The position numbers and the translations under genes are program-made. Shown here one piece after another: positions 3,873 to 46,673 of a stretch of DNA of 53,090 nucleotides. The first letter of the stretch is position 1, and every line of letters starts with the position of its first letter. This DNA comes from Octopus sinensis (Eukaryota): assembly GCF_006345805.1 (NCBI RefSeq), contig NW_021833955.1:1-53090 (forward strand), written 5' to 3'. The notes under the pieces are model-generated. The model ran no database searches. It was not told where the DNA came from and worked only from the letters and a program-made list of their open reading frames with translations.

Positions 3873-4005
3873 TGCTGCACTGAGCTCAGCTTGAGCAAAG
3901 ACGAAAGGTTCTCTGGCCTTGTGGTTACCAGATATCTCGCCAGCCATTGGACCTCATTGAAAACCCAAATTTGAAAACAAAATTACAAACATTTTTACCG
4001 CCACA
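3873..4005 (+). pseudogene. Putative exon B of RING/death-domain pseudogene
   Basis: Acceptor catcctttgtAG, consensus donor aca|GTAAGT. 133 nt (phase 0 to 1) reading CCTELSLSKDERFSGLVVTRYLASHWTSLKTQI*KQNYKHFYRH with TGA at 3972-3974. Phase matches the next exon. Confidence 0.55.
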
Positions 4006-4231
4006 GTAAGTATTTCCTGGCAATGACAAGATAAACTATTTTGTATATAATAATCATGTTTATATGTGTGTTTCGTTTAAGTTCTAACAATAAATAAAAC
4101 TGTTGCTAGTGTTTTGATGAAAGGTAGCACAAAACAACAATTATAGTTGTTGGGTGGTCAAAGAAAGAACACTGTTTCAATTACATTCACATAATGGGTT
4201 CTATTGACAGAGGTACCTCACTGGCACCCCA

Positions 4232-4267
<36 letters not shown>

Positions 4268-4444
4268 ATGGACTATTTAGCTACACACAAATCTGCCAAT
4301 ATGTAATGGTTTAAAGAATTTCTGATGTGCTCTTGATTGTCACTGAAGTCTCTCATAATATTCTCTTCTGTAAACACGTACGCAGTGTCATATTTCTTAT
4401 AAATGAATGTTATTGATTAGATATGTTTGTATTTCGTTGCACAG

Positions 4445-4584
4445 ATGATTGTGGTGCAGAAATAAAGCGGCCACAACAAAATTTCATCCCTGTGGACACC
4501 TTGTGACATGTGAAGAATGTTCAAACGTTCCACTGAAATGATGTCTGAGGTGTTTAAAACCTGTAACAAGCAGAAGTTGAGTTG
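4445..4584 (+). pseudogene. RING finger (C3HC4, IAP/Mind-bomb-like) exon, disabled
   Basis: Acceptor ttgcacAG, donor ttg|GTAAGA. Reads DCGAEI-(frameshift)-AATTKFHPCGHLVTCEECSNVPLK*CLRCLKPVTSRS*V, i.e. the FxPCGH-x2-C-x2-C-x(n)-C-x2-C RING-HC pattern, with a frameshift near 4465 and TGA at 4539 and 4578. Confidence 0.75.
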
Positions 4585-10222: not shown

Positions 10223-10710
10223 CAGGTGATTCTATCAAATGGATATGATCTGCATAATGCCGATTGCATAATGCCAAATCTGCATTATGCAGTTCATATC
10301 CATTTGATAGAATCACCTGTCAAAGTAATTGTGCAATATGTTCGACAAACCCACATGTGAACTGCAAAACCAAGGGCACCGTATACCAAATTGAGTGCCA
10401 AGAAGGAGCTTGCAAGACTAACCCAGAGTCATACATAGGTGAGACTTCTAGAAGTATCAATGATAGGTTCAAAGAACACCTGGACAACTACATTGAAAGG
10501 AAGCCAAACTCCATCTTCTACCAACATGCTGTGGACTGCCACAGGGGATCCTCAGGGAAACTTAAGTTAAACATCCTATCAACACATCCCACCGATGCAA
10601 TCTTGAGACAGGTCACAGAAGCTGTTTGTATACAAGAATACAAACCTACTCTCAACCGAAAATCCGAATGGAGTAACATCCAGATCCCATTCAGGAGGAC
10701 CATTCTATAA
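10223..10710 (+). mobile_element. 5'-truncated Penelope-like element: Cys-rich linker plus GIY-YIG endonuclease
   Basis: ORF 10264-10710 contains CQSNCAIC...VYQIEC...YIGETSRSINDRFKEH...IFYQHAVDCH...RQVTEAVCIQEYKPTLNR, the PLE-type GIY-YIG signature. No RT upstream. Preceded by an inverted copy of its own 5' end. Confidence 0.85.
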
Positions 10711-12959: not shown

Positions 12960-13409
12960 AAAATAAACTAAAATAATAAAATAATTAATTAATAAATATA
13001 CGTAAATAATCTTTAAAAATATAAATATATTCTTTAAAATACATATATATATTCTTACCTTTTCGTTTCACTCTGCCTGCAATCATCACAGAGTTTGCAT
13101 GGTCGCTGAAGTGAAGGCAAGTGGCTTAGAGGTTAGGGGTATTCGGCTTAGATTTGGGGTGATATATTAAAATCGGCTGGGGTGGGAGAGAGAGGATTTT
13201 CTGAGTAACTTTAATTTTTATATGAGTGACAACAGACAACTTTGATATACTTGACTGTTATTTCTAGCATCACGTAGGACTACCAATTGGATAATATTCC
13301 TCCGGATGCTTCTTAAAGTCTCCTTTAATCCTTCATGAAAAGCAATACAAAATATAATCTATTAATTTTAGCATATTACCCGACCACCTGTAGGACAATA
13401 TATTTGATA

Positions 13410-16320
13410 GACGCTTCCTCAGAGAGAATGGAAGAATGAAAAGAGAATTAAAGAAGGAATGAAAGAAAAGAGGAGGGAAGGAAAAAAGTAACGTGATTCT
13501 GTAATAATGCATGAAATGAGAGCGGAAGAAAGAAAGAAAGAAAGAAAGCGAAGTGATTCCGTAATAAACAAAGAGATAAGAGTGGGGGGAGAGAAAGAGA
13601 GAAAGGGAGAAAGAAAGTAAAAGAAAGAAGGAAAAATACAAAGAATGAAGGAAAAAAGAAGAAATAAAGAAAGAAAGAAGGAAAATGAAAGAAAGAAGGA
13701 GAGAAATATAAGAGTAGGGCGAGAGAGAGAGAGAAAAAGGAGAAAAGGAAAGGACACGAAACAACGACAAAAAAAGGAAGGAAGAAAAAGATAAGAAGCA
13801 AAGGAGAAGGAAAGATAAGAGCGAGGAAAGAAACAAGAATGACGGGTAAGAAGAAGGAAATGAAAAACAAAGAAATAAAGAAAATGAAAGAAAGAAAGAA
13901 TGAGAGAAATGAAGTAAGAAAAAAAGACAGAAAGGAAAGAAAGAAAGAAAGAAAAAGAATGAAAGAAAGAAAGAAAAAGGAAGAAGAAAAGAAAGAAAGG
14001 AAAGAAAGAAAGAAGGAAGGAAAGAAGAAAGATAGGAAAAGGAAAGAAGGAAAGAAAAAACAAAGACAGTAAAAAGAAAGAAGCAAAGGAAAAGGAAACA
14101 AAGAAAGAAAGAAGAATGGAAGGAAGGATGGAAGCAAGCAAGAAAGAAGGAAAGAAAGAAGGAAAGAAAGAAAGAAAGAAAGAAGGAGAGAATGAGAGGA
14201 ATGAAGGAAGAACGAAAGAAAGACAGAAGGAGAGAATGAGAGGAATGAAGGAAGAACGAAAGAAAGACAGATGGGAAAGAAAGGAAGAGTAAAGAAAGAA
14301 AGAACGAAAGAAAGCAAAGAGAAAGAAAGGAAAAGGAAAGAAAGAAAGAAAAAAGAAAGCAAAGAGAAAGAAAGGAAAAGAAAAGAAAGAAAGAACGACA
14401 GGAAAAAGAAAGAAAGAAAGAAATAAAGAAAAAAAAAAAAAGAAAAAATGTAAGAAACAAAAAGAAAGAAAGGATGAGAGAGAGATAGAAACAATGAGAT
14501 TAAGGGAAAGAAAGAGAGAGAGAGAAAAAGAAGGAAAGAATGAAAAAGAGAGAGAGAAGGAGGAAGAAAGAAAAGAGAAAAAGAAGGAATGATAGAAGAG
14601 GGGGTGGAAGGAAAAAAGTAACGTGATTTTGTAATAATGCATGAAATGAGAGCGAAAGAAAGAAAGAAAGAAAGCGAAGTGATTCCGTAATAAACAAAGA
14701 GATGAGAGCGGGGTGGGGAGAGAAAGAAAGAAAGAAGAGAGAAAGAAGGAAAAGGAACGAAGGAAAAATAGAAAGAATGAAGTAAAAAGGAAGGAAAAAA
14801 GAAAGAAAGAAGGAAAATGAAGAAAAGAAGGAGAGAAAGATAGGTGTAGGGCGAGAGGGAGAGAGAGAAGAAGAAGAAAAGGAAAGGAAACGAAACAACG
14901 ACAAAAATAGGAAGGAAGAAAAAGAAAAGAAGCAAAGGAGAAGGAAAGATAAGAGCGAGGAAAGAAAAAAGAAAGAAGGGTAAGAAGAAGGAAATGATAA
15001 ACAGAAAGAAAAACAAAGAAGGAAAATTAGAGAAGAAAACAAAGAAAGAATGAGAGAAATGAAGGAAGAAAGAAAGAAAAACAGAAAGGAAAGAATGAAA
15101 GAAAGAAAGAAGAAAAAGAAGCAAAGAAAGAAAGAAAGAATGAATGAAAGAAGGAGAGAAGAATGAAAGGAAAAGGAAAGAAAGAAAGAAAGAAAGAAAT
15201 AAGAAGGAAAGGAAAAAGAAAGAAAGGAAGAAAGAAAAAACAAAGAAAGAAAGAAGAGAAAGAAAGAAAGAGAAAGGAAAGAAAGAAAGAAAGAAAAAAG
15301 AAAGAAGGAAAGAAAGAAATAAACGAAAAGGAAAGAAATAAAGAAAAAAGAAAGAAAGAAAGAAAAAAGAAAGGAAAAGGAAAGAAATAAAGAAAAAGAA
15401 ATAAAGAAATAAAAAAGAAAGGAAATGGAAAGAAAGGAAGAAAGACAGGAAAAGAAAGAAAGAAAGAAAGAAAGAAGGAAAAAACGGAAGGAAAGTAAAG
15501 GGAAACAAAAAGAAAGAAAGAATGAGAGAGAGATAGAGAGGAAGGCGACGTAATTCTGAAAAAATGATGAGAAGAAAGAGGGAGAGGGAGAGAGAGGGGG
15601 AGGAAGGAGGAGGGATTAGAGAAATAAATGTTAAGAGAGGAGGAGTATGAGATGAGAGAGAAAGAGTAAAAAGGCGGAGCATTAATATATAATAAGGTAA
15701 TAGAGAGAGGGAGAGGGAGAGAGGGAGAAAGAGAGAGACAGACAAACAGAGACACGGAGACAGAGAGAGAGACATAAGAAGCGAGAGGGAGAAAGAGAGA
15801 GACTGAAATAGAGAAATCGAGAGAGCAAAGAGAGAGAAAGACAGACATAGAGAAAGAGAGGGAGAGGGAAAGGGAGGAGAAAGGGAGGGAAAGAATGAGG
15901 TAAGAGAATGAGAGAATATTATATAAGGAGGTGGAGGGAGAGAGAGAATGATACATAGGTTTAGAAAGAGAGGGAGAGTGTGACGTGGGGCGGAGCGCAA
16001 AAGAGGTAGAGGGAGAGTATGAGATATGAGGTGGTAAAGAGGGAGGGAGAGAGACAAAAAGTGAGGGAGGGGGAAGGAAACAGAGGTGATGTATGAGATA
16101 TATGCTTTGTGAGGGAGGGAGAGTAAGAGTTGAGAGAAAACGAGGGATGAGGGAGGCGGGGTTAAACAATAACATAAATAATTGACAGAGGGGGAGGGAG
16201 AGGAGTAGAGAAGGAGAGGGAATGATGTGTGTGATAAGAGAGGGAGTCTATCATGTATTAGAGAAAGGAAGAGGGGAAGGATGAGGTATTAATACAGAAT
16301 GAGGAAGGAGAGAGAAGAGT
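13410..16320. repeat. ~2.9-kb purine-rich (GAAA/GA) low-complexity tract with internal duplication
   Basis: Almost exclusively A/G on the plus strand. The marker GAAAAAAGTAACGTGATT(C/T)TGTAATAATGCATGAAATGAGAGCG recurs at 13481 and 14611 (period 1130). Confidence 0.9.
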
Positions 16321-16469
16321 TTCGAAGTGTCCTTCATTTTCATATGAAACACAAAACCAAACTTTAACATACTTGGCTGTTATCTCTAGCATCACATTTG
16401 ATCCCCAACTGGACTATATTTCTCCAAAAGCTTCTGAAAGTGTCCTTCATGATAACAATCTAAAGTATA

Positions 16470-17859
16470 GTGTGGTGGGCTGTTATTTCTAGCAAGATAA
16501 CAGACCACCAATACGTTTTATAGACGCTTCTTCACTTGGTTTCTCATTCGAGGAAGAAGTCTGATCAGATCCGGGAAAAAGTTTTATAAATGCTTCTTAA
16601 ATTGTATTTCAATTTCGTATGAAAATCAAAGCAACTTTGTGTGTAGTGGGCTGTTATTTCTAGCAAGATAACAGACCACCAATACGTTTTATAGACGCTT
16701 CTTCACTTGGTTTCTCCTTCGAGGAAGAAGTCTGACCAGATCTGAAAAAAAGTTTTATAAATGCTTCTTAAATTGTCTTTCAATTTCGTATGAAAAACAA
16801 AGCAACTTTGAGTGTAGTGGCTTGTTATTTCTAGCAAGATAACAGACCACCAATACATTTATAGACGCTTCTTCACTTGGTTTCTCATTCGAGGAAGAAG
16901 TCTGACCAGATCCGGGAAAAAGTTTTATAAATGCTTCTTAAATTGTCTTTCAATTTCGTATGAAAAACAAAGCAACTTTGAGTGTAGTGGCTTGTTATTT
17001 CTAGCAAGATAACAGACCACCAATACATTTATAGACGCTTCTTCACTTGGTTTCTCATTCGAGGAAGAAGTCTGACCAGATCCGGGAAAAAGTTTTATAA
17101 ATGCTTCTTAAATTGTCTTTCAATTTCGTATGAAAAACAAAGCAACTTTGAGTGTAGTGGCTTGTTATTTCTAGCAAGATAACAGACCACCAATACATTT
17201 ATAGACGCTTCTTCACTTGGTTTCTCATTCGAGGAAGAAGTCTGACCAGATCCGGGAAAAAGTTTTATAAATGCTTCTTAAATTGTCTTTCAATTTCGTA
17301 TGAAAAACAAAGCAACTTTGAGTGTAGTGGGCTGTTATTTCTAGCAAGATACCAGACCACCAATACGTTTTATAGACGCTTCTTCACTTGGTTTCTCTTT
17401 CGAGGAAGAAGTCTGACCAGATCCGGGAAAAAGTTTTATAAATGCTTCTTAAATTGTCTTTCAATTTCGTATGAAAAACAAAGCAACTTTGAGTGTAGTG
17501 GGCTGTTATTTCTAGCACGATAACAGACCACCAATACCTTTTATAGACGCTTCTTCACTTGGTTTCTCATTCGAGGAAGAAGTCTGACCAGATCCGGGAA
17601 AAAGTTTTATAAATGCTTCTTAAATTGTCTTTCAATTTCGTATGAAAAACAAAGCAACTTTGAGTGTAGTGGGCTGTTATTTCTAGCAAGATACCAGACC
17701 ACCAATACGTTTTATAGACGCTTCTTCACTTGGTTTCTCTTTCGAGGAAGAAGTCTGACCAGATCCGGGAAAAAGTTTTATAAATGCTTCTTAAATTGTC
17801 TTTCAATTTCGTATGAAAAACAAAGCAACTTTGAGTGTAGTGGGCTGTTATTTCTAGCA
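16470..17859. repeat. Tandem array of a 170/171-bp unit (8 full copies plus a partial one)
   Basis: Unit starts GTGT(A/G)GTGG..TGTTATTTCTAGC at 16470, 16641, 16812, 16982, 17152, 17322, 17493, 17664 and 17835. Degenerate related sequence continues on both flanks. Confidence 0.95.
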
Positions 17860-18074
17860 TGATGTCAAACCAGGTGTAGGAGGATTTTTTGAATAAATGC
17901 TTCTTAAATTGTCCGTCAATGTCTCGGCTATTTAATTTGCTCAATTAAGAACTACACAGTAATTATGTAATTAATGGTTAGTTAAATAATTAGCTTCTGG
18001 TAAAATAATTAGCGAGAGAGAAATTTGAAGGTAAATGTGAAAATATAATTTATTTGTAAGAAAGTAAGGTTTCT

Positions 18075-22072: not shown

Positions 22073-22289
22073 TATAAGATTTAAATAAAACAATAGTTTC
22101 CTCTTCCCTAAACTTATTTGCCTTTTATAATCAGTTCGATCTCTTATTTCCATTCAATCATATTTGGCAGTTTTCTGAAGTCTTCGCAGAGACACAGATT
22201 CGATTTAACCCAACCGAAAGTAATTCAGTTGAAAAGAAGAACGGGGTGTCAGAAGAGGAATTATCTTTGCCCCGTCTGGGATAATCTCT

Positions 22290-23036
22290 TCCCTCTCATC
22301 CTTCTCTTTATTCCATCATCACGTCCTATTTCTTTCAATCTCGTTCATTCCTTTTTTCCTTCCTTTTTTTCTTTATTCATTCATTCTTTTTTCTCTTTTC
22401 TTCCTTCTATCTTTCAATATAACTTGCTTTCTTTCTTCATTCTTTCTTTCAGTTTATCTGCCTTTTTTCAGTCCTTCTTTCTTTCCTTCTTTCTTTCTTT
22501 TTTTCTATTTTCCATCTTCTATCTTTCTATCTCTGTTTCTTTTGTTCTTTCTTCCTTCTTTCTGTCTTTCTGTCAGTTTTTCTTTATTTCCTTCTTTCTT
22601 ATCTCCTCCTTTCTTTCTTTCTTTTATTCTTTCTCTCTCTTTCTTTCTTTCCTTCTTTACTTTCTCCCTTCTTCCTTTCCTTCTTTCTTATCTCTTTCTT
22701 TCTTTCATTCTCTGTCTCATTTGTTATCAATCTTATTTTCTCCTTCGCAAAATAACTTCGCCGTTTGTTTATTCTTCCTTTCTTTTTTCCACTCTTTCTT
22801 TATTTCCTTCTTTCTTTCTCTTCTTTCTTTGTTTTATTTCCTTCCATTTCATACTTCCTTTCTTCTTCTTTCTACTATTCTTTCCTCTTTCTTTCTTCTT
22901 CTTTGTTTCTGTGTTTTTCTTTCTTTCTTTCACTCTTTTAGTTTTCCTTTACGTACTCTTTTTTCTCTACCTTTCTATCTCTCTTTCTATCTCTCTTTCT
23001 TTCTCTCTTTCTTTCTCTCTCTCTCTTTTCTTTCCT
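22290..23036. repeat. Pyrimidine-rich (TTTC/CT) tract
   Basis: Almost exclusively C/T on the plus strand; source of the spurious F/L/S ORFs. Confidence 0.9.
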
Positions 23037-23559
23037 CGTAAGTCGCGGTTTTCTCTTTTCGTCTAGCGTCATTTGGGAAACATGACAACAAAGCTATAAG
23101 ACGGACACACCGAACAAAGCTAGCAGTCAGAAACTCACTGGAGAAAGGCGGTTCGGTTCGACTTCCAGGGAGACTTAGACAGATAGACACACATGTTGAC
23201 GTCATGAAACGAGAGGATGTATATTTTGGTGGTGGGATCCATCTTTGCCGGCACCGTTCAGTTTTGATCATTTGCCGAGTGATTCGTGTCGCCGATGTCG
23301 TCGGATACTTCTAAGTTCTTTACACCGAGCTACACTACACCTCGGATGCTGGTTCATGTCTTTCGAAAGACACAGCGCATTGTAGTAGCTGTTCTCTTAA
23401 GCAAGTCTCTCTGAACAATATCACTAATCGTAAACTAACGATGGTTTTCACCTCGTCCAATGAAAGGGTAGCCGCAAGATTGTTTTTTTTTTATATCATC
23501 GGACAGCGATGGTAAGCGGAATGACAGCAGATCACCGCTTAAGTGGATCCTTTTTCTAA

Positions 23560-26953: not shown

Positions 26954-28917
26954 CTAATGCCAATTGCTCGTAACATATATTGATTCAATATAGGGCTTAT
27001 CTCTCATAATAAATAATCCATCAAAACGTTGTCCAAATTTCCGTAAATCATGATGAAATAATCCGAAACATGTATGCCTTGATGTGGCAGACTTCAATTC
27101 CTGAGAGCTGAGAAAGATTTCGCATTTGCTGTCTACAGATACTTGGTGGATATTGTTATTACAATCTGATATGTAAATATTTTCGCCGTGGATGGTCAAG
27201 GATTTGTTGAAAATGTTTGGAATGGTTCCTCACTTGAATCATTAGTTGTTGACTTCTTACCCAATTGTCTCTGTACCAACATACATCGTAATGATCTTCC
27301 TTGTACTTAAGAACGACGATGTCTTCATTCGATGTCACACCCATACCTACAACCTTCCCCTCTTTCCCTAAATTCACTCGCCCTTATACTCGTACATTTC
27401 ACCGCCAATGTGAAGTATGTCTGCGTATGTCCCATATGGAATATTACTACATTCATTTGGAGCGTCTTCAAAACACACACCAGATTATGGCGTTCTTTTT
27501 GTACATTAAATTGTATGGTTTTTCAGTTGTGATCTTTTTTAAAGACACAAATCTGTATCGAAGAACATCAGTTGTTTTATCGTCACGAAAGAGGACTACA
27601 AATGATTCATCGGTCCATTGACATATATCTTGAGCTTCTTTTTCAAATGTTTGACTGTAAAGCAGATGACCGTCTCCACTGGTGACCATGAGAGTACATT
27701 TATGGAGGAGCACGACGATACTATTGTCTTGTAACATAATTAGCTTAAAAGCATTAAGAAAACAAAACATCGAATTTGAATCTAGTAAACCAGATAGAGA
27801 AAATGAAAGCGGGAACATTGCTGTTCTATGTGGCAGTCTTCTCACTGATATTTCATCAATTCCTAACATACTTTCCGCTATGTAATTACCACGTCTTACT
27901 TCTATTTCCCTTGATGTACTTCTTCTTTCTCCTCCATCGCCACCGTTTTTAAGTTTGTTAAATAATTCATTACTGAACATTCCCTTGTTCTTCTGAAATG
28001 TAATGGAAGGGAAGTAAAGGCCAAAATCAATATTCGATAACGACATAGATTCCAGAACCTTCAGTTGGTCCCCATCAATTTTTATAGTATCACATTCAAT
28101 CATGTTGATATGTACACACCAGTAAATATTTCCCACTTTTCTCCATATTATACCATAAGGTACTCGACTTTCCCAAACTTTATATTTCTCCAAGTTTTGT
28201 GACTTCAGTTGAAATATTTCTTGTCTGTTAGGGACTGTGACCAAGATATTTCTTTCTCCTGTAAAACATACACCACCAACAAAACTTCCAAAATCTCTAT
28301 AACATAGCAACTTCCCGTCTTCATCAATAGTTTAACATTTCCATTATTGGCCATTTCGCACACAAGTCTTTTTACTTGAACAGGACAATTGTTTGTTTGT
28401 AACCGTGAAACGGGGAATTTTTGCCGATTAATCTTGTACAAACCTTCAATATATAAGTACGAGTCATAGTTTGCAACAATCCTCGGGCCTTTACAGTTAA
28501 TACTGTTGAAATCCAACGGACGTTTATAATGTCTTTCATTTAAGAATATTCTCTTGTATTCACCGTTCTGCAACAATGAGACAATACGATACTTTTTCGT
28601 GTTTTCATAGATGTTCTTCCGCCCAGTAATGTACAAATAAGTATCATCGGTTGCCATAGAAATGGGTCGGGAATAAATACTGTGCTTAAATGAATATAAA
28701 TATTGCCCGTTCGGGTTCAGAATAGTGATGAGCCTCTCGTATTGACATTATGTTGTCATTAGCAATAACTGAGATATGGGTGATATTATATCTGTAGCAC
28801 ATCCAAAATAAGTCTATTTCTCTCATAATACGGACAGCTGACTGTATTTCATCGATATATATATAAAACAGGCCGTTTTCAATTTCGGGTATGCAGGTAC
28901 CACCACCAACATTACTG

Positions 28918-28993
<76 letters not shown>

Positions 28994-29395
28994 GCTACAC
29001 ACCAGTAGATTGTCGGATCGACAAGCGATACAATTGTATCGATTTTCCGTGTGGTAAGTTGCCAAGATCAATGGAAATTCCACTTTTAATGTCAGAGGTT
29101 GATGGTTATTGGTCGTTATAACCAATGTGTTTGATCGCCAGCAACACATATGTCTAGGGACAACATTTAACTTGATAGAGTCAACAAGTTGACCATCAAA
29201 AGTTAATATCTTAATGTTTTGATTTGTGCTGTCATATAAAGCAACCAGGTTATTTTCTGTAATAACCAAACAACCAATCTCCACTGGATGTCTATCTCCA
29301 AAACTTTGAGGGACAACAACTTCATGAGCTTTATCAGAAACAGTGAGATCTTGTAGACAACATTTCACTGAGACTGATGTTTCTAGAAAATACAT
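26954..29395 (-). pseudogene. 3' half of giant beta-propeller exon (modules 4-6), frameshifted
   Basis: Overlapping ORFs 28823-29395, 28205-28657, 27468-28310, 27159-27377 and 26954-27199 join by frame shifts into continuous NHL-like text (e.g. VEIGCLVITENNLVALYDSTNQNIKILTFDG, VGGVCFTGERNILVTVPNRQEIF, AQDICQWTDESFVVLF, TIHGENIYISD). Confidence 0.8.
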
Positions 29396-31801
29396 CTACC
29401 AGATCGATGAACATGTTAATTTGGCTTCTTGTGACATGATCTTTCACCAGCAAGTCATGCTCATTTACAGCAAACATGCGGCTGTTGTCTATCAAATGGA
29501 CACACATTTTATCAATACGTCCACCATAGAGATTGGATTGTGTTTTCCCTTGCGACAGTAAAATATTGGGTATCATCTCAATGCTATAAGGACCACCGTC
29601 ATAACCATAGAGATTGGAGGGTGTTTTCACTTGGGATGGTAAAACACTTCTTCTCCTCTTCCTGATGATCTTGTAGAAGAATACTGCTTTCTTACCAACA
29701 ATCAATAGTTTTAGTGTTTCATTTTCTAACGATAATGATTTCATTACAAAAGGAATATTAATTTTATGAATTATTTGAACTTGATTACAATTTTTAATGT
29801 TTAAAATATCTAAATGCGATGGTTTATCGCAATAACAAATAATATGACTTTCACCCAGCTTACACACCCGTACATAAGCCTGGTTTAATGCTACACTTAT
29901 AACTGCCTTTGATACGTTTCCGAAGACCCGTAATTGCTTCTCTAGAGGTAATGTGACGCCTATCTGATTATAATTCCATCGACATACATCTGTAGCTGTA
30001 GACGGCAGAGATAATCTAGACACAATGTTCCCTTCGTTGGAAATGTATAACAAACAATCATTATATATGTCGGACAACACCAACTGTCCATTTGCCAGAT
30101 GACATATTTCACCAATGAGAACTTGGTCATTCTCCTTTTCTTCGAGTCGAATATTTAGATTTTTATTATAAGGATTTTGAAAGGTTACATGACAGTCTGA
30201 CCAGTCATGGTACTTGTAAAGAAGAATCCGACTGAGCAGATCGTCCAGCACATAAGCTGTTCCTTGGAAAACAGCAGCGTGACAGCGAAAGTTTGAAGGA
30301 AGTTTCAACTGCCATTTCCTTTGTCCAGTTATATTGTAACAAGTCATCAAAGACTCTCTCCTGAAGATAACATAGAAGTATAATTTGTCTGTGAAAACAT
30401 GATGAGGATAGCCATTGAACTCAATGTGTTTCTTGGAAAGCTCCTCACCAAAGCTTGAATAAAATAACAAGTTACGTTTCTTTCTGTCTACAACTACAAA
30501 ATTAATTGGAGTAGCAGCAATGGCGACATTGTCATGTTCCAATGTAATTCTGTTTACAATGTCGACATGATCCGTTTTAATCAATAAAATATGTACCTCC
30601 ACGTTACCTTCATTGGTGGTCAGAGCCAAACACCTATTTGATACCATATGACACATTTGAATGTAATTGTTTTCGACGTCTATTAAATCACATTCAGTTA
30701 GTTGTGGACAGGTAATATATTGAAGTTTCCTGTCCTCACTAAAAAGGACAATAAATGTGTTCGAATCCACTCTGCAGAAAACAGAAGGCTGGAGTTTAAA
30801 GGTTAAACATTTTCCACCAAACGGTTGCCCTTCGCCAGTAACTAATATAGCTTTTAGATCCCGATATATAATTACTACTGAAGAGGCTGACATAGGTAGA
30901 ATCGTTGTAATGTTGGAGGGGTCATCAATATGGATTTGGTTTATCAGGCTCGGGACATGGTCTTGGTGATGGTAAGACAGCCGAGGCCAAAAATCTTTAT
31001 TTGTCCTAATAATATGTACAAGACCAAAACGGTCAGTCAAGTAAATATTATTTGTTGCCACACAAATATATCGAGCTTTTATCCCAATTTCTCTTTGGGA
31101 CACAGCACCGTTTGCTGAAATCTTGTAAATTACATTTCCTTGCAGAGCGTAAGAATAATTTCGATATACGGTGAGGTCGGTTGGAATATCGATGGAATGG
31201 GTCCTCAACTGAAACAAGTGTCTGCCATCTATTGTGTAACAGCTAATTCTATTTATATTAGCTAAGGCTATTAAGATATGATACTGTGGACCAACTGCTA
31301 TGTTTCCAACAATTTCTTGCACACTAAATTTTTCTTCAAATTTATTTTTATCCCAGTCTATGAGATATATTGTCTTACTAAACATTTCAGTCCCTACAAA
31401 TGTAGAATGTTCGAAATAGGAAATTGTAAAGAAACTATAATCCAGAGATTTTATGTGGAAACTTGATGGATTAATGAAAACTATTTTCTTGCGGAAAGGA
31501 ATTGTGGCTAGAACAGTGTGTTCACCAATTCTTGTCATGTCTGTGACATTAGAAGAACAATGAAAATCAAAATCACCGCCTGTTGTGGCACAACTTATTA
31601 ACTTCAAATCTGGTGAATAGGTTACTATTCCATTGCAGATTTCAACGATTCTTGAAACTGTGACCAGGTTCTTGGAATCATTATCGGAGTCTGTGAGCTG
31701 CAATATTTTGGACACAGCTGGGCAAAGGGGACGGAATTTGGATGAATGCGACTTCATAATACTTTTACAGTCAAAACGTGGTATCTGCATGTAGTGATCA
31801 T
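29334..31801 (-). CDS. Large exon encoding tandem NHL/YVTN-like beta-propeller modules 1-3 (about 820 aa open)
   Basis: Uninterrupted 818-aa ORF, not low complexity. Acceptor ttgttattcAG at 31802-31803 gives a phase-1 start (x)DHYMQIP. Repeated blade motifs such as IGEICHLANGQLVLSDIYNDCLLYISNEGNIVSRLSLPSTATDVCRW, typical of mollusc TRIM/B-box-associated propellers. Confidence 0.8.
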
Positions 31802-32490
31802 CTGAATAACAATAACAACAGAAATAAAATTATATTAAATTTTCAAAAGACATGAATGGGTAATATTAATTTGTAACAGCAACTTCCTACGCAATTCGAG
31901 TCACAAACAAATCAAATCTTCTCAATTTAACAAAAACATTGCACAACATTCCTACCACACCATTTTCAAGACACTTTCCATTTCATTTATTGTAGATAAA
32001 CACGGAAATAGCAACATCAGTGGGGTTACAAGCTGGAAACACTGATATACACCAGCGGAGTTTGTTACTGAAGAGCGATATCCATGATGATCTGGCTATG
32101 TATACCTTGACCACTTCAATTGTGGTTAATACTAGAAGGTCTACACATGTACAACCACATACTGTACAATGAGGAAATAATTTATTGCATCCCGACTGCT
32201 ACCACACTCCACCCCACAAAACAAAACACTGTATTTTGTAAGTTAACTCTGTGATGTTTAACAAGATGAAAGAATGGAATATTTGACGGGTTAGATCTGG
32301 GTGTTTTTTACGGAGGCTGTGACCAGCTGCGTATTGTTATATATGTGTGTGTGTATGTATGTGAGTACTAAATATGGCCTGAGTAGCTATTACACGACCA
32401 ATCGTAAGATTTATGATCTCTCTCTTTCTCTCTCTCTCTCGCTCTCTCTCTCTTTCTTTCTCTCTCTCTCTTTCTCCTTCTCTCTTTCTT

Positions 32491-35381: not shown

Positions 35382-35640
35382 TATATTCTGCTATTGTGAG
35401 AGATTTCTACCATCAATGGTCTACAAGAGTTCACGCAGGTTTCGGTCAATATTTATATACTTTCAACAGTGGGCCCATTATTTATGCCCTCCACAAAATT
35501 GATTGGCATTCCTAAATCTCCGCTCTCAATTAAGACATCTTACATATCTCATTTACTTCTCAAGTATCATCCTTAATAAAGTAGATGAGGTAATGGCAAA
35601 CTTGATAGAAATCAATAAGGTAATGTTGATTTATACTCAC

Positions 35641-35691
35641 CAACTGGTTCTACTTCTGTTTCAACTTCATTGTCAACAAGCATTGAAGAAT
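35641..35691 (-). CDS. Putative 51-nt symmetric (phase 1-1) exon upstream of the propeller exon
   Basis: Minus strand ctatttcAG|ATTCTTCAATG...CCAGTTG|GTGAGT, reading DSSMLVDNEVETEVEPV. Phase is compatible with the acceptor at 31801. Confidence 0.45.
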
Positions 35692-36704
35692 CTGAAATAG
35701 ATATTCTTAAATTTTACACTTTACAGAAAAATGTCTTTATCTTAATAAATAATCAAAATTTTGTTATTCTGTGACATTCCTGTCATTGATGGTCAACTGG
35801 TGACCAGTACGGCTTGGGTCAAAATTTTCATACTTTGTACAGTGATACCATGTAATAGCTCAATATTCAGGTCCACAACTAAATAGACTAATCTAATATA
35901 TCTCCCTATTAAGACATCTTACATAATCTAAGAATCACTCTATTAAGATATCTCCATAATCTAATAATTATCTTATTTAATTATCCCACGATAACACCGA
36001 TTATCTCTTAGTTTAATTTTTGCTTTCATCTATCGGAGCCCTATCAATGATTTGGCATTATCTTATCACCTGCAGATTTCTCTAATCAACATTCTTCTCC
36101 TCTTCTAATTCTGATGTCAATGAAGCTGGACTCCAAACATCTAACCACAAACGCATGTCACAATACATCAAGTAGGATTAATATACACATGCTCTCTTTT
36201 TAAAAGGTTGCTGCTGGTAATCTTTAATCTTAAATCCCCACATCACAATTCATCAGAATAGGATCTGATTCTGGAAACATTTGAAGATATTTCAATGTCA
36301 TTAATCCTCCTTAATAAGCAGCTATTTTCAGGTGAACAATGTTTGCTCCTAAGCAAGTGGAGCAGAAAGTGATATCAGGTATCGCAAACCACTGTATTCT
36401 TGCATAGAAACTCATTAACTACACACACAAACACACACACATATACACACATGCACACAATCACACACACACACACACACACATATATTTATGTGTGTGT
36501 GTATGTATATATGTATATGTATGTAGATGTGTATGTATATATACACATAGGTTTATACATACATGCATACATATATATTTATATTAGCGCGCCAGAACCA
36601 AGACATTTGAAATTTTATTCCCGATGTAATCAGTAAAACTAAGCACATGTCTGTCTTGACACAGAGAGCTGGGGTTAGTTTTTCAGTTTGCATCTCGATG
36701 ACCG

Positions 36705-45183: not shown

Positions 45184-46673
45184 TAGTTAAGAGTAACAAC
45201 ATCACACTAGATAAAACCAATGAAATAAAAGAATTAGACCAAAGCCAAACTTACAAATACTTAGGAATCCATGAACTAGATAAGACACAACACACACAAA
45301 TGAAAGAGAAAATAAAAAAAGAATATTATAGACGAGTTAGATCAATACTAAAAACAAGATAATAGGTATCAACACTTTAGCTGTCCCAGTTATAAGTTAC
45401 AGCTACAATATCCTTAACTGGACACTAAATGAACTGACCAAAATAGATAGGAAAACAAGAAAAATAATGACAGGATCTAGGATGCATCACCCAAAATCTG
45501 ACATAGAAAGACTATATATACAACGTATAGAAGGTGGTAGAGGCCTTATACAGCTGGAAAACTACTATAAAATAACCACCATAGGACTGCAAAAATATCT
45601 ACTTCAGAAGGAAGGAAAACTGATCCAGATAGCAGCAAAACACGAGCAAAACAAAAAACTGTTCTCAATATTTAAGGAAGCTGACAAACAAGAAATCATA
45701 CCACCTAATAAACACGAAGAAGAAGAAGAAGAAGATGAAGAAACAACAAAAGCTATAAAACAAATGAAATCCAAACTAAAAATAGAACAGCAACGAAACA
45801 TGATAAAACGATGGCAAGAAAAGCCCCTTCATGGTAAATACTGGACTAAACTAAAGGCAAAAGAAATAGACAAAGAAAAATCCCAGCAATGGTTGAGAAG
45901 CTCAGGACTCAAAGCAGAAACAGAGGGATTTTTAATTGCAGCACAAGACCAAAGCCTCCCCACCAGAAATTACCAAAAACATGTAATGAAAAGAAATATT
46001 ACAAGTAAATGCAGAATATGTGGAGATGGACAAGAAACAATAAATCATATTATCTCTAGCTGCCCAGTCCTGGCTAAGAAGGAATATATTCACAGACACG
46101 ACAGAGTTGGAACCTACATACATTGGAAGCTATGCCAACATTATGGAATAACAACAGAAAAAAGATGGTATAGGCACACACTAGAAAAGGTCACAGAAAA
46201 CGAGAAAGCAACCATACTCTGGGATATGCCGATACACACAGATAGAGAAATTAAGGCCAACAGACCAGATATAGTTGTCAGAGATCATGAAGAAAAAAAA
46301 TGCTTTCTAATTGATGTATCAATACCGGCAGATGACAACGTGTCTCTAAAAGAAATGGAGAAACCCTCAAAATACAAAGACCTGGAAATAGAGGTAACTA
46401 GAATGTGGAATCTGAAAACAGAAACAATTCCTATCATAGTAGGTGCATTAGGCATGATAAAAAAATATTCAGACAAATACATAACAAAAACACCAGGACT
46501 TACAAACACATATAACATACAGAAAATTGCACTACTAGGCACTGCACACATCCTACGCAGAACACTTTCCATACAATAACCATCAGAGCATCACAACAAA
46601 TCACAGCACATACCCAAGGCACACAGAGCTGTGCTCGGTAGTGAAGTGAAAGCACGCTATAAAAATAAAACTA

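What the first reader, a model, noticed from the sequence alone, without database searches (positions are those of the whole stretch)
26954..31801. A single ~4.85-kb exon encoding six tandem diverged NHL-like beta-propeller modules
One blade motif aligns six times at roughly 255-aa spacing (module 5 is shorter): NVTDMTRIGEHTVLATIPFRKKIVFI / QPSVFCRVDSNTFIVLFSEDRKLQYI / TATDVCRWNYNQIGVTLPLEKQLRVF / VPRHMCCWRSNTLVITTNNHQPLTL / FVGGVCFTGERNILVTVPNRQEIFQL / EAQDICQWTDESFVVLFRDDK. Approximate module starts are 31670, 30920, 30120, 29290, 28390 and 27760. In characterised TRIM-NHL proteins (TRIM2/3, TRIM71, Brat) one propeller is the ligand- or RNA-binding unit. An intronless string of six highly diverged ones is unusual and suggests a lineage-specific multivalent recognition protein (inference). 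This is the strongest candidate for an undescribed system in the window.
Basis: partly seen in the sequence, partly recalled or inferred. Interest (0 to 1): 0.75.

Follow-up and report, generated by a model that had tools for sequence, protein, structure and literature searches.

The report
Six-propeller octopus gene, damaged copy
This stretch of octopus DNA is one giant exon from an unnamed, octopus-only gene family whose proteins are strings of six NHL-type beta-propeller domains, but this copy lacks the family's N-terminal region, is broken by frameshifts, and is probably a dying duplicate.

Summary
All six motif strings sit on the minus strand at about 255-residue spacing. A profile self-comparison of intact relatives maps the six motif positions onto one another (E 8e-19 at one module's shift). 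The window is Octopus sinensis. The region is one exon, 31801 down to a stop at 26999-26997. Once its indels are neutralised it reads as 1,617 codons with no in-frame stop, collinear with intact 1,650-1,900-residue relatives that have uninterrupted 5.1-kb coding sequences.

AlphaFold models are all-beta with six propeller-like domains. Modules 1, 2, 4 and 6 show six blades; modules 3 and 5 are less regular. Family profiles hit solved TRIM-NHL domains (Brat, TRIM2/3/71) ahead of every other natural protein in the PDB, but Pfam's NHL model stays below threshold. Intact members carry no RING or B-box.

Only octopods have the family (three Octopus species and Argonauta). Every member is annotated "uncharacterized" and I found no paper on it.

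This copy is damaged. It lacks the N-terminal region, and a 14-bp deletion puts a stop after module 3. Fifteen further small frameshifts follow, and many may be assembly errors. The O. vulgaris orthologue carries two nonsense codons.

Verdict: an undescribed architecture of a known fold, seen here in a probably decaying copy.

The parts
26997..31801 (-). One giant exon, the last coding exon. It holds six tandem propeller modules and reads as 1,617 codons (DDHY...YYER) once window-specific indels are neutralised. The stop TAA is at 26999-26997.
   Evidence: The acceptor AG is at 31803-31802, and P0001 residues 52-873 map to 31802-29337. The restored frame has no in-frame stop. It is collinear with intact members P0038/P0039 at 53% identity over about 1,590 residues.
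29334..31790 (-). The only long intact ORF in the window: 818 codons covering modules 1-3. It is identical to the large exon of RefSeq model LOC115228948 (O. sinensis) and ends at the TGA at 29336-29334.
   Evidence: (100% identity to P0001).
30957..31670 (-). Module 1. Six four-stranded blades are modelled (ORF residues 47-262, pLDDT about 85). The motif NVTDMTRIG... lies at 31550-31473, in blade 2.
30165..30956 (-). Module 2. Six blades are modelled (ORF residues 281-526, pLDDT about 80). The motif lies at 30791-30714.
29357..30164 (-). Module 3. Four to five blades are modelled with confidence. The tail has low confidence and holds a basic or Ser-rich insert and the conserved ...DLVDVFSRNISLSEMLS stretch. 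The motif lies at 29999-29922.
29357..29358 (-). Site of a window-specific 14-bp deletion (TCTTCTAGATTGTA is present in both L002 and L003). It shifts the frame and creates the stop at 29336-29334.
28421..29356 (-). Module 4. Six blades are modelled in the intact relative P0017. The motif lies at 29161-29087.
28917..28996 (-). A poly-Ser (AGT)n microsatellite inside module 4. Its length varies between copies. Here a TA interruption (+5 nt relative to L003) shifts the frame.
27813..28420 (-). Module 5, the short one (about 215 residues). About four blades plus a disordered insert are modelled in P0017. The motif lies at 28283-28206. A window-specific 27-bp in-frame deletion at 28368 removes DIDISDEGK.
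26997..27812 (-). Module 6. Six blades are modelled in P0017 (pLDDT 75-92). The motif lies at 27638-27576. The module ends with the family's C-terminus, ...GLxYYER*.
26997..28747 (-). A zone of window-specific single-base indels. Deletions: 28747, 28740, 28328, 27544, 27489, 27473, 27381, 27234, 27223, 27100, 27077, 27029, 27014, and 26997 (just past the stop). Insertion: 27578. Twelve of the 14 deletions lie in runs of identical bases.
35642..35692 (-). A short upstream exon that the RefSeq model splices onto the giant exon (it encodes DSSMLVDNEVETEVEPV). It lies inside a dispersed repeat, so this 5' end is doubtful.
   Evidence: In one search, window 35468-36584 matches five places in L003 at 88-91% identity.

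Best explanation
The region is the large, intronless 3' exon of a member of an octopod-specific, unannotated gene family.

Shown: intact members are proteins of 1,650-1,900 residues encoded by one uninterrupted coding sequence of about 5.1 kb. They have an N-terminal region of about 150 residues with no recognisable domain, followed by six tandem, mutually homologous beta-propeller modules of about 215-290 residues. The modules are remote relatives of the NHL propeller of TRIM-NHL proteins.

Inferred origin: the array arose by repeated internal duplication of one NHL-type propeller taken from a TRIM-like ancestor, with loss of the RING and B-box part.

Inferred mechanism: by analogy with single NHL propellers, which bind RNA or protein on one face, the protein acts as a cytosolic multivalent binding scaffold. 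Each propeller offers a separate, quickly diverging ligand face. The family evolves by gene birth and death.

Shown for this copy: it lacks the N-terminal region. A 14-bp deletion stops translation after module 3. Modules 4-6 are still recognisable but out of frame. The orthologous O. vulgaris locus is independently disabled.

Conclusion for this copy: it is most likely a recently inactivated or truncated duplicate, not a working six-propeller gene.
For: Species and family:
- The 818-residue ORF is 100% identical to O. sinensis LOC115228948. All relatives are Octopus 'uncharacterized' proteins with no Pfam domain.
- An exhaustive profile search of 1.84 billion representative proteins found only 26 hits. 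They come from O. bimaculoides, O. sinensis, O. vulgaris and Argonauta hians, and no squid, cuttlefish or Nautilus protein reached E 0.001. The two weakest hits lie outside the family: a bivalve RING + B-box + propeller protein and an unnamed protein from an ENA metagenome assembly.

Six homologous modules:
- hhalign self-alignments give E 8e-19, 1e-16 and 7.5e-10, with the six motif positions superposed.

Fold:
- The AlphaFold models are all-beta. Domains 47-262, 281-526 and 559-710 of the window ORF are modelled. Four further domains are modelled in P0017 residues 677-1712.
- Foldseek matches strings of propellers at E 1e-18 to 1e-22.

NHL kinship:
- The module profile hits Brat at 6e-8, TRIM2 at 1e-7, TRIM3 at 4e-6, Thin at 5e-5, Mei-P26 at 5e-4 and TRIM71 at 0.0075.
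- For the full-length profile, 12 of 14 PDB hits are TRIM-NHL domains.

Intronless giant ORFs:
- L001 has 1,442 open codons.
- P0017 and P0037 translate from single stretches of 5,139 and 5,154 bp.
- P0042 is a single stretch on a 7.2-kb contig.

The family is functional:
- The O. bimaculoides / O. sinensis orthologue pair keeps about 1,710 codons open at dS 0.18, with dN/dS 0.40.
- P0022 orthologues are conserved in three Octopus species.

This copy is damaged:
- It carries a 14-bp deletion, a microsatellite frameshift and 14 single-base frameshifts in the coding frame.
- The collinear O. vulgaris locus L003 (95-97% identity over 20 kb) has AAA>TAA and TCA>TAA nonsense changes and a 1-bp insertion.
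- The second O. sinensis copy, L002, has its own frameshifts.
- Three gene models attach three unrelated 5' ends to this exon. One of those 5' exons lies in a dispersed repeat.
Against: - Function and ligand are untested. No expression data were available.
- Pfam NHL is never above threshold.
- The models have only moderate confidence (mean pLDDT 66.5, pTM about 0.4) and come from shallow alignments of 13-14 sequences. I could not inspect coordinates to confirm ring closure. Modules 3 and 5 look irregular.
- The pseudogene reading is weakened by three points. The restored frame has no in-frame stop over 1,617 codons. dN/dS among the three near-identical copies is 0.23-0.63 in both halves. Most single-base deletions sit in runs of identical bases, as long-read assembly errors do.
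- Absence from squid, cuttlefish and Nautilus rests on predicted proteomes only, not on genome searches.
Confidence: 0.6

Rival explanations
1. The locus is intact in the animal. The frame breaks are assembly errors or one haplotype's variants, so the window really encodes a working protein of about 1,600 residues with six propellers, although without the family's usual N-terminal region.
For: - Twelve of 14 single-base deletions lie in runs of identical bases.
- With indels neutralised there is no in-frame stop in 1,617 codons.
- Window-specific substitutions are equal in the two halves (13 against 16), while single-base indels number 0 against 15 (14 deletions, one just past the stop, plus one insertion). 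That indel-to-substitution ratio is far too high for neutral decay.
- dN/dS between the window and L002 is 0.25-0.29 in both halves.
Against: - A 14-bp deletion flanked by TCT/TCTA microhomology is not a typical consensus error.
- All single-base indels are confined to the 3' 1.75 kb, with none in the 2.4 kb upstream.
- The orthologous O. vulgaris locus, from a different assembly, has two nonsense substitutions, which are not indel errors.
- There is no consistent 5' end.
Confidence: 0.2
2. The functional product is the truncated three-propeller protein of the RefSeq model (873 residues). Modules 4-6 are then a relic in the 3' UTR.
For: - The 818-codon ORF is the only long open frame in the window and carries no indel relative to the other copies.
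- dN/dS for the first half is 0.29-0.5.
Against: - The O. vulgaris orthologue has stops inside modules 2 and 3.
- The 5' exon of the model lies in a dispersed repeat.
- Module 3 loses its conserved tail and is modelled poorly at its end.
- The second half shows the same low dN/dS, which argues against long-standing UTR status.
Confidence: 0.12
3. The modules are propellers of another class (WD40, or YWTD as in LRP receptors), and the NHL resemblance is only a generic blade similarity.
For: - Foldseek's best matches are LRP2, LRP4 (YWTD), DDB1 and IFT-A WD40 proteins.
- The highest-scoring PDB sequence hits of the module profile are designed or repetitive WD40 proteins.
- Weak Pfam hits go to WD-type propeller models.
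Against: - The WD40 sequence hits are sums of many identical weak blades of 3-7 bits each.
- All natural proteins at the top of both profile searches are TRIM-NHL domains.
- The nearest proteins outside the family include a RING + B-box + propeller protein.
- The Foldseek ranking is driven by the number of propellers in the target, not by blade type.
- There are no YWTD, EGF or WD40 Pfam hits.
Confidence: 0.15
4. The giant intronless multi-copy ORF belongs to a mobile element or an endogenous virus rather than to a host gene family.
For: - It is intronless, multi-copy, often disrupted and surrounded by repeats.
Against: - No transposase, reverse-transcriptase, integrase or capsid domain is linked to it.
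- Copies share long collinear flanks across species, as orthologous host loci do.
- Conserved single orthologues exist in three Octopus species on large chromosomal contigs.
- Only 26 representatives turned up among 1.84 billion proteins.
Confidence: 0.03

Closest known systems
NHL domains of TRIM-NHL proteins (Drosophila Brat, Mei-P26 and Thin; human TRIM2, TRIM3 and TRIM71/LIN-41)
   Same: They share a six-bladed propeller of roughly 40-residue four-stranded blades. Among natural proteins of known structure, they are the best sequence-profile matches. The blade pattern 'hydrophobic strand - D/N-x-N/G - hhhF/L - x-x-G-x-h' recurs. Such propellers are ligand-binding units, for RNA in Brat and LIN-41 (PMC5908797).
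   Different: The octopus proteins have six propellers in tandem instead of one. They have no RING, B-box or coiled-coil region. Pfam NHL stays below threshold. The family is restricted to octopods. Ligand binding is untested.
Mollusc RING + B-box + propeller proteins (for example Potamilus streckersoni KAK3588083.1, here P0035)
   Same: P0035 is one of only two proteins outside the family that the exhaustive search reached (E 5e-5). Its C-terminal propeller carries the same 'xxDVCxxxxxxVAVSIPxxKEIVFL' type of blade.
   Different: It has a single propeller behind a RING and B-box, is 467 residues long, and comes from a bivalve.
LRP2/megalin, LRP4 and ROS1 arrays of YWTD six-bladed propellers
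   Same: They are strings of several six-bladed propellers in one chain, and they are Foldseek's best structural matches. They give a precedent for multivalent ligand capture by propeller arrays.
   Different: They are extracellular receptors with a signal peptide, EGF spacers and YWTD motifs. None of these features is found here, and no obvious signal peptide is seen by inspection of the N-termini.
DDB1 and Trm734 (triple-propeller adaptors)
   Same: They are cytosolic or nuclear multi-propeller scaffolds and rank high in Foldseek.
   Different: They have seven-bladed WD40-like propellers, partly interleaved, with no detectable sequence relationship to this family.

Membership tests
NHL-repeat beta-propeller (Pfam PF01436) | Match to the Pfam NHL model at its gathering score (20 bits) | tested here: not met
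   The six window pieces give no NHL hit at E<=1. One of 14 family members hits at E 0.049. The best value is P0022 at 18.5 bits, E 0.002.
NHL-repeat beta-propeller (Pfam PF01436) | Detectable sequence homology to solved NHL domains | tested here: met
   The module profile A2 hits Brat at 6e-8, TRIM2 at 1e-7, TRIM3 at 4e-6, Thin at 5e-5, Mei-P26 at 5e-4 and TRIM71 at 0.0075. For the full-length profile A3, 12 of 14 PDB hits are TRIM-NHL domains, led by TRIM71 at 1e-4.
NHL-repeat beta-propeller (Pfam PF01436) | Six blades, each of four antiparallel strands, per domain | tested here: inconclusive
   DSSP strings of the AlphaFold models give six four-strand groups for modules 1, 2, 4 and 6. Module 3 gives about five plus a low-confidence tail, and module 5 gives about four plus a disordered insert. 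Mean pLDDT is 66.5. Coordinates could not be inspected, so ring closure is unconfirmed.
TRIM-NHL proteins (TRIM2/3/32/71, Brat, Mei-P26) | N-terminal RING, B-box and coiled coil | tested here: not met
   Intact members P0017, P0018, P0020 and P0022 give no such Pfam hit, and neither does the P0017 N-terminal region. The ANK + RING N-terminus of model P0014 comes from exons 44 kb upstream. In this window the matching relic lies on the opposite strand and contains a stop.
TRIM-NHL proteins (TRIM2/3/32/71, Brat, Mei-P26) | One C-terminal NHL propeller that binds RNA or protein | tested here: not met
   There are six tandem modules. Binding cannot be tested with these tools.
LDL-receptor-type YWTD propeller arrays | YWTD (Ldl_recept_b) repeats, EGF spacers and a signal peptide | tested here: not met
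   Pfam gives no hit for Ldl_recept_b or EGF. The resemblance comes from Foldseek only.
WD40 propellers | WD40 repeat signature (Pfam WD40 and relatives above threshold) | tested here: not met
   There are only sub-threshold hits, such as WDR90_beta-prop_4th at E 1.4e-4 at best and far below its 50-bit cut-off. The PDB WD40 hits are sums of identical designed blades.
Pseudogene (this copy) | Frame-disrupting lesions relative to intact relatives | tested here: met
   The window has a 14-bp deletion, a +5-nt change in the microsatellite, 13 single-base deletions in the coding frame and one single-base insertion. The family's N-terminal region is missing.
Pseudogene (this copy) | Independent disabling mutations in the orthologue, and neutral substitution pattern | tested here: inconclusive
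   The O. vulgaris orthologue has two nonsense codons and a 1-bp insertion, which meets the first half of the feature. However, dN/dS is 0.5-0.63 against it and 0.25-0.29 against L002, from only 8-20 changes per class. Many of the window's indels may be assembly errors.

The most novel reading that the evidence does not exclude
The octopod hexa-propeller proteins form a new class of fast-evolving cytosolic multivalent receptors. They would descend from TRIM-NHL-like ancestors that shed the ubiquitin-ligase part and multiplied the ligand-binding propeller six-fold. They would be used for recognising variable targets such as viral or transposon RNA or protein. The birth-and-death turnover seen in this window would be the trace of an arms race.
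Probability: 0.12. Interest if true: 0.75.

Novelty: new variant of a known kind. Interest (0 to 1): 0.45.

Why it matters
NHL propellers are known as single ligand-binding or RNA-binding units at the end of TRIM ubiquitin ligases. A family that strings six of them into one polypeptide of about 190 kDa is an architecture I could not find described. It has no ligase part, is encoded by one 5-kb exon, is confined to octopods, has at least 7-12 gene models per Octopus species, and evolves quickly (dN/dS 0.4 overall, 0.7-0.8 in modules 5-6).

If the intact members prove to be expressed, they would be a tractable example of how a lineage builds a multivalent binder by internal domain duplication. 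They would also be a candidate for an octopod-specific recognition system.

For genome annotation, the case shows that current gene models for this family are unreliable. Models skip modules, borrow exons from satellites and dispersed repeats, and fuse neighbouring ANK-RING exons.

The copy in this window adds little on its own, because it is probably a decaying duplicate.

Tried and rejected
- Pfam scans of the six window pieces, of 14 relatives and of four intact members gave no family above threshold.
- A single-sequence PDB search and a PDB search with the modules 1-3 profile gave nothing useful.
- BLASTP of the window pieces against each other gave only weak pairs. The repeat became significant only with family profiles.
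- Foldseek on whole multi-domain models cannot tell NHL from YWTD or WD40, because the ranking follows the number of propellers.
- Four literature searches found no paper on this family. They covered octopus or cephalopod with NHL, TRIM, propeller and gene family expansion, plus six LOC identifiers.
- A TRIM-type or ANK-RING N-terminus for the family was rejected. It appears only in one gene model, across a 44-kb intron, and the relic in this window is on the other strand and carries a stop.
- A mobile-element or viral origin was rejected for lack of any element-type domain, and because the flanks are collinear between species.
There are 14 deletions (13 in frame), one insertion, and a microsatellite shift that the first 'restoration' had silently removed.


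Full report
WHAT IS THERE

On the minus strand the window holds one long open frame, 31790-29334 (818 codons). It is followed by shorter open stretches in other frames down to about 26957. No other long credible ORF exists in the 53-kb window. The other large 'ORFs' are translations of (AGAA)n/(CTTT)n low-complexity DNA.

The 818-residue product is 100% identical to Octopus sinensis LOC115228948, so the window is octopus genome.

IS THE SIX-FOLD REPEAT REAL?

Inside the window alone the signal is weak (BLASTP E 0.002 at best; profile P about 1e-3).

An exhaustive profile search of 1.84 billion representative proteins gave intact full-length relatives of 1,625-1,913 residues. I aligned six of them and compared the alignment with itself. 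The results were:
- one module's shift: E 8e-19 over 876 columns
- two modules: E 1e-16
- three modules: E 7.5e-10
- four modules: E 6e-4

The six motif positions fall exactly on one another.

ONE EXON, AND THE STATE OF THIS COPY

Intact relatives are encoded without introns:
- P0017 (O. bimaculoides) is a single stretch of 5,139 bp, and P0037 (O. sinensis) one of 5,154 bp.
- P0042 is one stretch on a 7.2-kb contig.
- The paralogue at L001 has 1,442 open codons, then one frameshift.

I aligned the window with two near-identical loci: L002, a second O. sinensis copy, and L003, from an O. vulgaris assembly. The window differs in these ways:
- A 14-bp deletion at 29358 creates the stop at 29336-29334.
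- A +5-nt 'TA'-interrupted state of the poly-Ser (AGT)n microsatellite in module 4 shifts the frame.
- A 27-bp in-frame deletion lies at 28368.
- There are 14 single-base deletions, 13 inside the frame and one just past the stop.
- There is one single-base insertion, at 27578.

When these are neutralised with N, the exon reads as 1,617 codons from DDHY to YYER* with no in-frame stop. That frame is collinear with intact members over all six modules: 53% identity to P0038/P0039 over about 1,590 residues.

IS THIS COPY ALIVE?

Evidence against:
- The window is collinear with L003 over about 20 kb at 95-97% identity, so L003 is the O. vulgaris orthologue. That orthologue has two nonsense substitutions, AAA>TAA in module 2 and TCA>TAA in module 3, plus a 1-bp insertion.
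- L002 has its own frameshifts.
- This subfamily lacks the roughly 150-residue N-terminal region that all intact members have in the same exon.
- Three gene models attach three unrelated 5' ends. The 5' exon of the RefSeq model (35692-35642) lies in a dispersed repeat with at least five copies in L003. The ANK + RING start of model P0014 is joined across a 44-kb intron.

Evidence for:
- dN/dS among the three copies is 0.23-0.63 in both halves, though from only 8-20 changes per class.
- Twelve of the 14 single-base deletions sit in runs of identical bases.
- Window-specific substitutions are equal in the two halves (13 against 16), while the single-base indels number 0 against 15. That ratio looks like consensus error, not decay.

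What I cannot explain is why such errors would be confined to the last 1.75 kb.

My reading is that the 14-bp deletion is real, many single-base gaps are probably artefacts, and the locus is a recently disabled duplicate in both sister species. I put this at about 60%.

FOLD

AlphaFold2 on the 818-residue ORF, with 14 family sequences, gives an all-beta model (mean pLDDT 66.5). It has three domains: 47-262 (pLDDT about 85), 281-526 (about 80) and 559-710 (about 70). The first two have six groups of four strands each.

A second model covers P0017 residues 677-1712, which is modules 3-6 (mean pLDDT 66.5). It shows:
- module 3, with about five blades and a low-confidence tail
- module 4, with six blades
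- module 5, with about four blades and a disordered insert
- module 6, with six blades at pLDDT 75-92

Foldseek against the PDB returns proteins made of several propellers at E 1e-18 to 1e-22: LRP2/megalin, LRP4, ROS1, DDB1, Trm734 and IFT-A. This confirms a string of propellers but cannot name the propeller class.

IS IT NHL-LIKE?

Pfam's NHL model never passes its cut-off.

I built a profile from 21 module sequences, covering all six modules of several intact members, and searched the PDB sequences with it. The top hits are designed or repetitive WD40 proteins, whose scores are sums of many identical weak blades. After those, every leading natural protein is a TRIM-NHL domain: Brat 6e-8, TRIM2 1e-7, TRIM3 4e-6, Thin 5e-5, Mei-P26 5e-4 and TRIM71 0.0075.

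Independently, for the uncollapsed full-length profile, 12 of its 14 PDB hits are TRIM-NHL domains.

The exhaustive search reached only two proteins outside the family. One is a bivalve protein with a RING, a B-box and one C-terminal propeller. The other is an unnamed protein from an ENA metagenome assembly with a long N-terminal region that matches no Pfam family and one propeller.

So the modules are remote relatives of the TRIM-type NHL propeller. The proteins themselves are not TRIM-NHL proteins, because intact members have no RING, B-box or coiled-coil match.

FAMILY AND SELECTION

Members come only from O. bimaculoides, O. sinensis, O. vulgaris and Argonauta hians, plus one unidentified sample whose protein is 85% identical to an Octopus member. 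All are named 'uncharacterized' or 'hypothetical'. There are roughly 7-12 gene models per Octopus species.

No squid, cuttlefish or Nautilus protein reached E 0.001. This rests on predicted proteomes, not on genome searches.

The orthologue pair P0017/P0037 keeps about 1,710 codons open at dS 0.18. Its dN/dS is 0.40 overall, 0.25-0.34 in modules 1-4, and 0.73-0.84 in modules 5-6. The intact genes are therefore under selection but evolve fast.

HOW IT MOST LIKELY WORKS

Shown: the protein is a large chain with six homologous NHL-type propeller modules and no signal-peptide-like N-terminus (the latter judged by inspection of the sequences).

Inferred: each propeller keeps the role it has in TRIM-NHL proteins, a ligand-binding face for RNA or protein (PMC5908797 for LIN-41 and Brat). 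The tandem array would give multivalent or combinatorial binding. Lineage restriction, copy-number turnover, disabled copies and fast evolution fit a birth-and-death family of the kind seen in recognition or defence genes. None of this is tested.

COMPARISON AND NOVELTY

The fold and the blade type are known. What is new is the architecture: six tandem NHL-type propellers, no ligase part, one giant exon, octopods only. I found no description of it in four literature searches or in any database name.

I rate it a new variant of a known kind. Interest is moderate (0.45). The family is worth a look, but the copy in this window is probably a decaying duplicate, and function is unknown.

Noticed in passing
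window 16469-17863: A 171-bp satellite with 8.2 copies at 97% identity. Its translation supplies the last 23 residues of the O. vulgaris gene model P0002, so that model's C-terminus is an annotation artefact. The same satellite lies at L003 72.7-73.5 kb.
   Followed up: partly
window 13333-16175 and 22118-23066: (AGAA)n/(CTTT)n low-complexity tracts with extreme strand skew (GC skew 0.81). They produce spurious ORFs of up to 869 codons, rich in S, L and F.
   Followed up: partly
window 3873-4571 (+): Relics of ankyrin and RING exons, up to 76% identical to the N-terminus of model P0014. The RING piece contains in-frame stops. Similar ANK-RING exons lie 44 kb upstream of the giant exon in L003, and an ANK match lies at L001 35231-35362. 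Family loci therefore seem to sit among ANK-RING genes.
   Followed up: partly
window 35468-36584: A dispersed repeat of about 1.1 kb with five copies in L003 (88-91% identity). It contains the 51-nt exon (35692-35642) that the RefSeq model splices to the giant exon.
   Followed up: partly
window 31814-32344: The sequence directly upstream of the giant exon matches three other places in L002/L003 at about 75% identity. A repeat therefore abuts the exon where intact relatives have their N-terminal coding region.
   Followed up: no
window 10264-10710 (+): A 148-codon ORF with a GIY-YIG nuclease domain (Pfam E 1.3e-5), probably part of a Penelope-like retroelement.
   Followed up: no
window 45467-46579 (+): A 370-codon ORF with the zf-RVT domain (Pfam E 3.9e-6), the tail of a non-LTR retrotransposon. 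A 96.6% identical copy lies in L003.
   Followed up: no
L005 3001-8139 and L006 3001-8154 (intact orthologue pair): dN/dS rises from 0.25-0.34 in modules 1-4 to 0.84 and 0.73 in modules 5 and 6. The two C-terminal modules are either much less constrained or under diversifying selection.
   Followed up: partly
L004 374-5437 (Logan assembly of SRR11869391): An intact 1,687-codon single-stretch ORF on a 7.2-kb contig. It is 85% identical to the divergent, well-conserved member P0022/P0044, so it comes from a further octopod species that I could not identify.
   Followed up: no
window 28917-28996 and the matching sites in L002/L003: The coding (AGT)n poly-Ser microsatellite in module 4 differs in length in all three copies (by 31 nt and 5 nt). 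It is a recurrent source of frameshifts in this subfamily. Other members have Ser-, Gly- or Gln-rich inserts at loop positions.
   Followed up: partly
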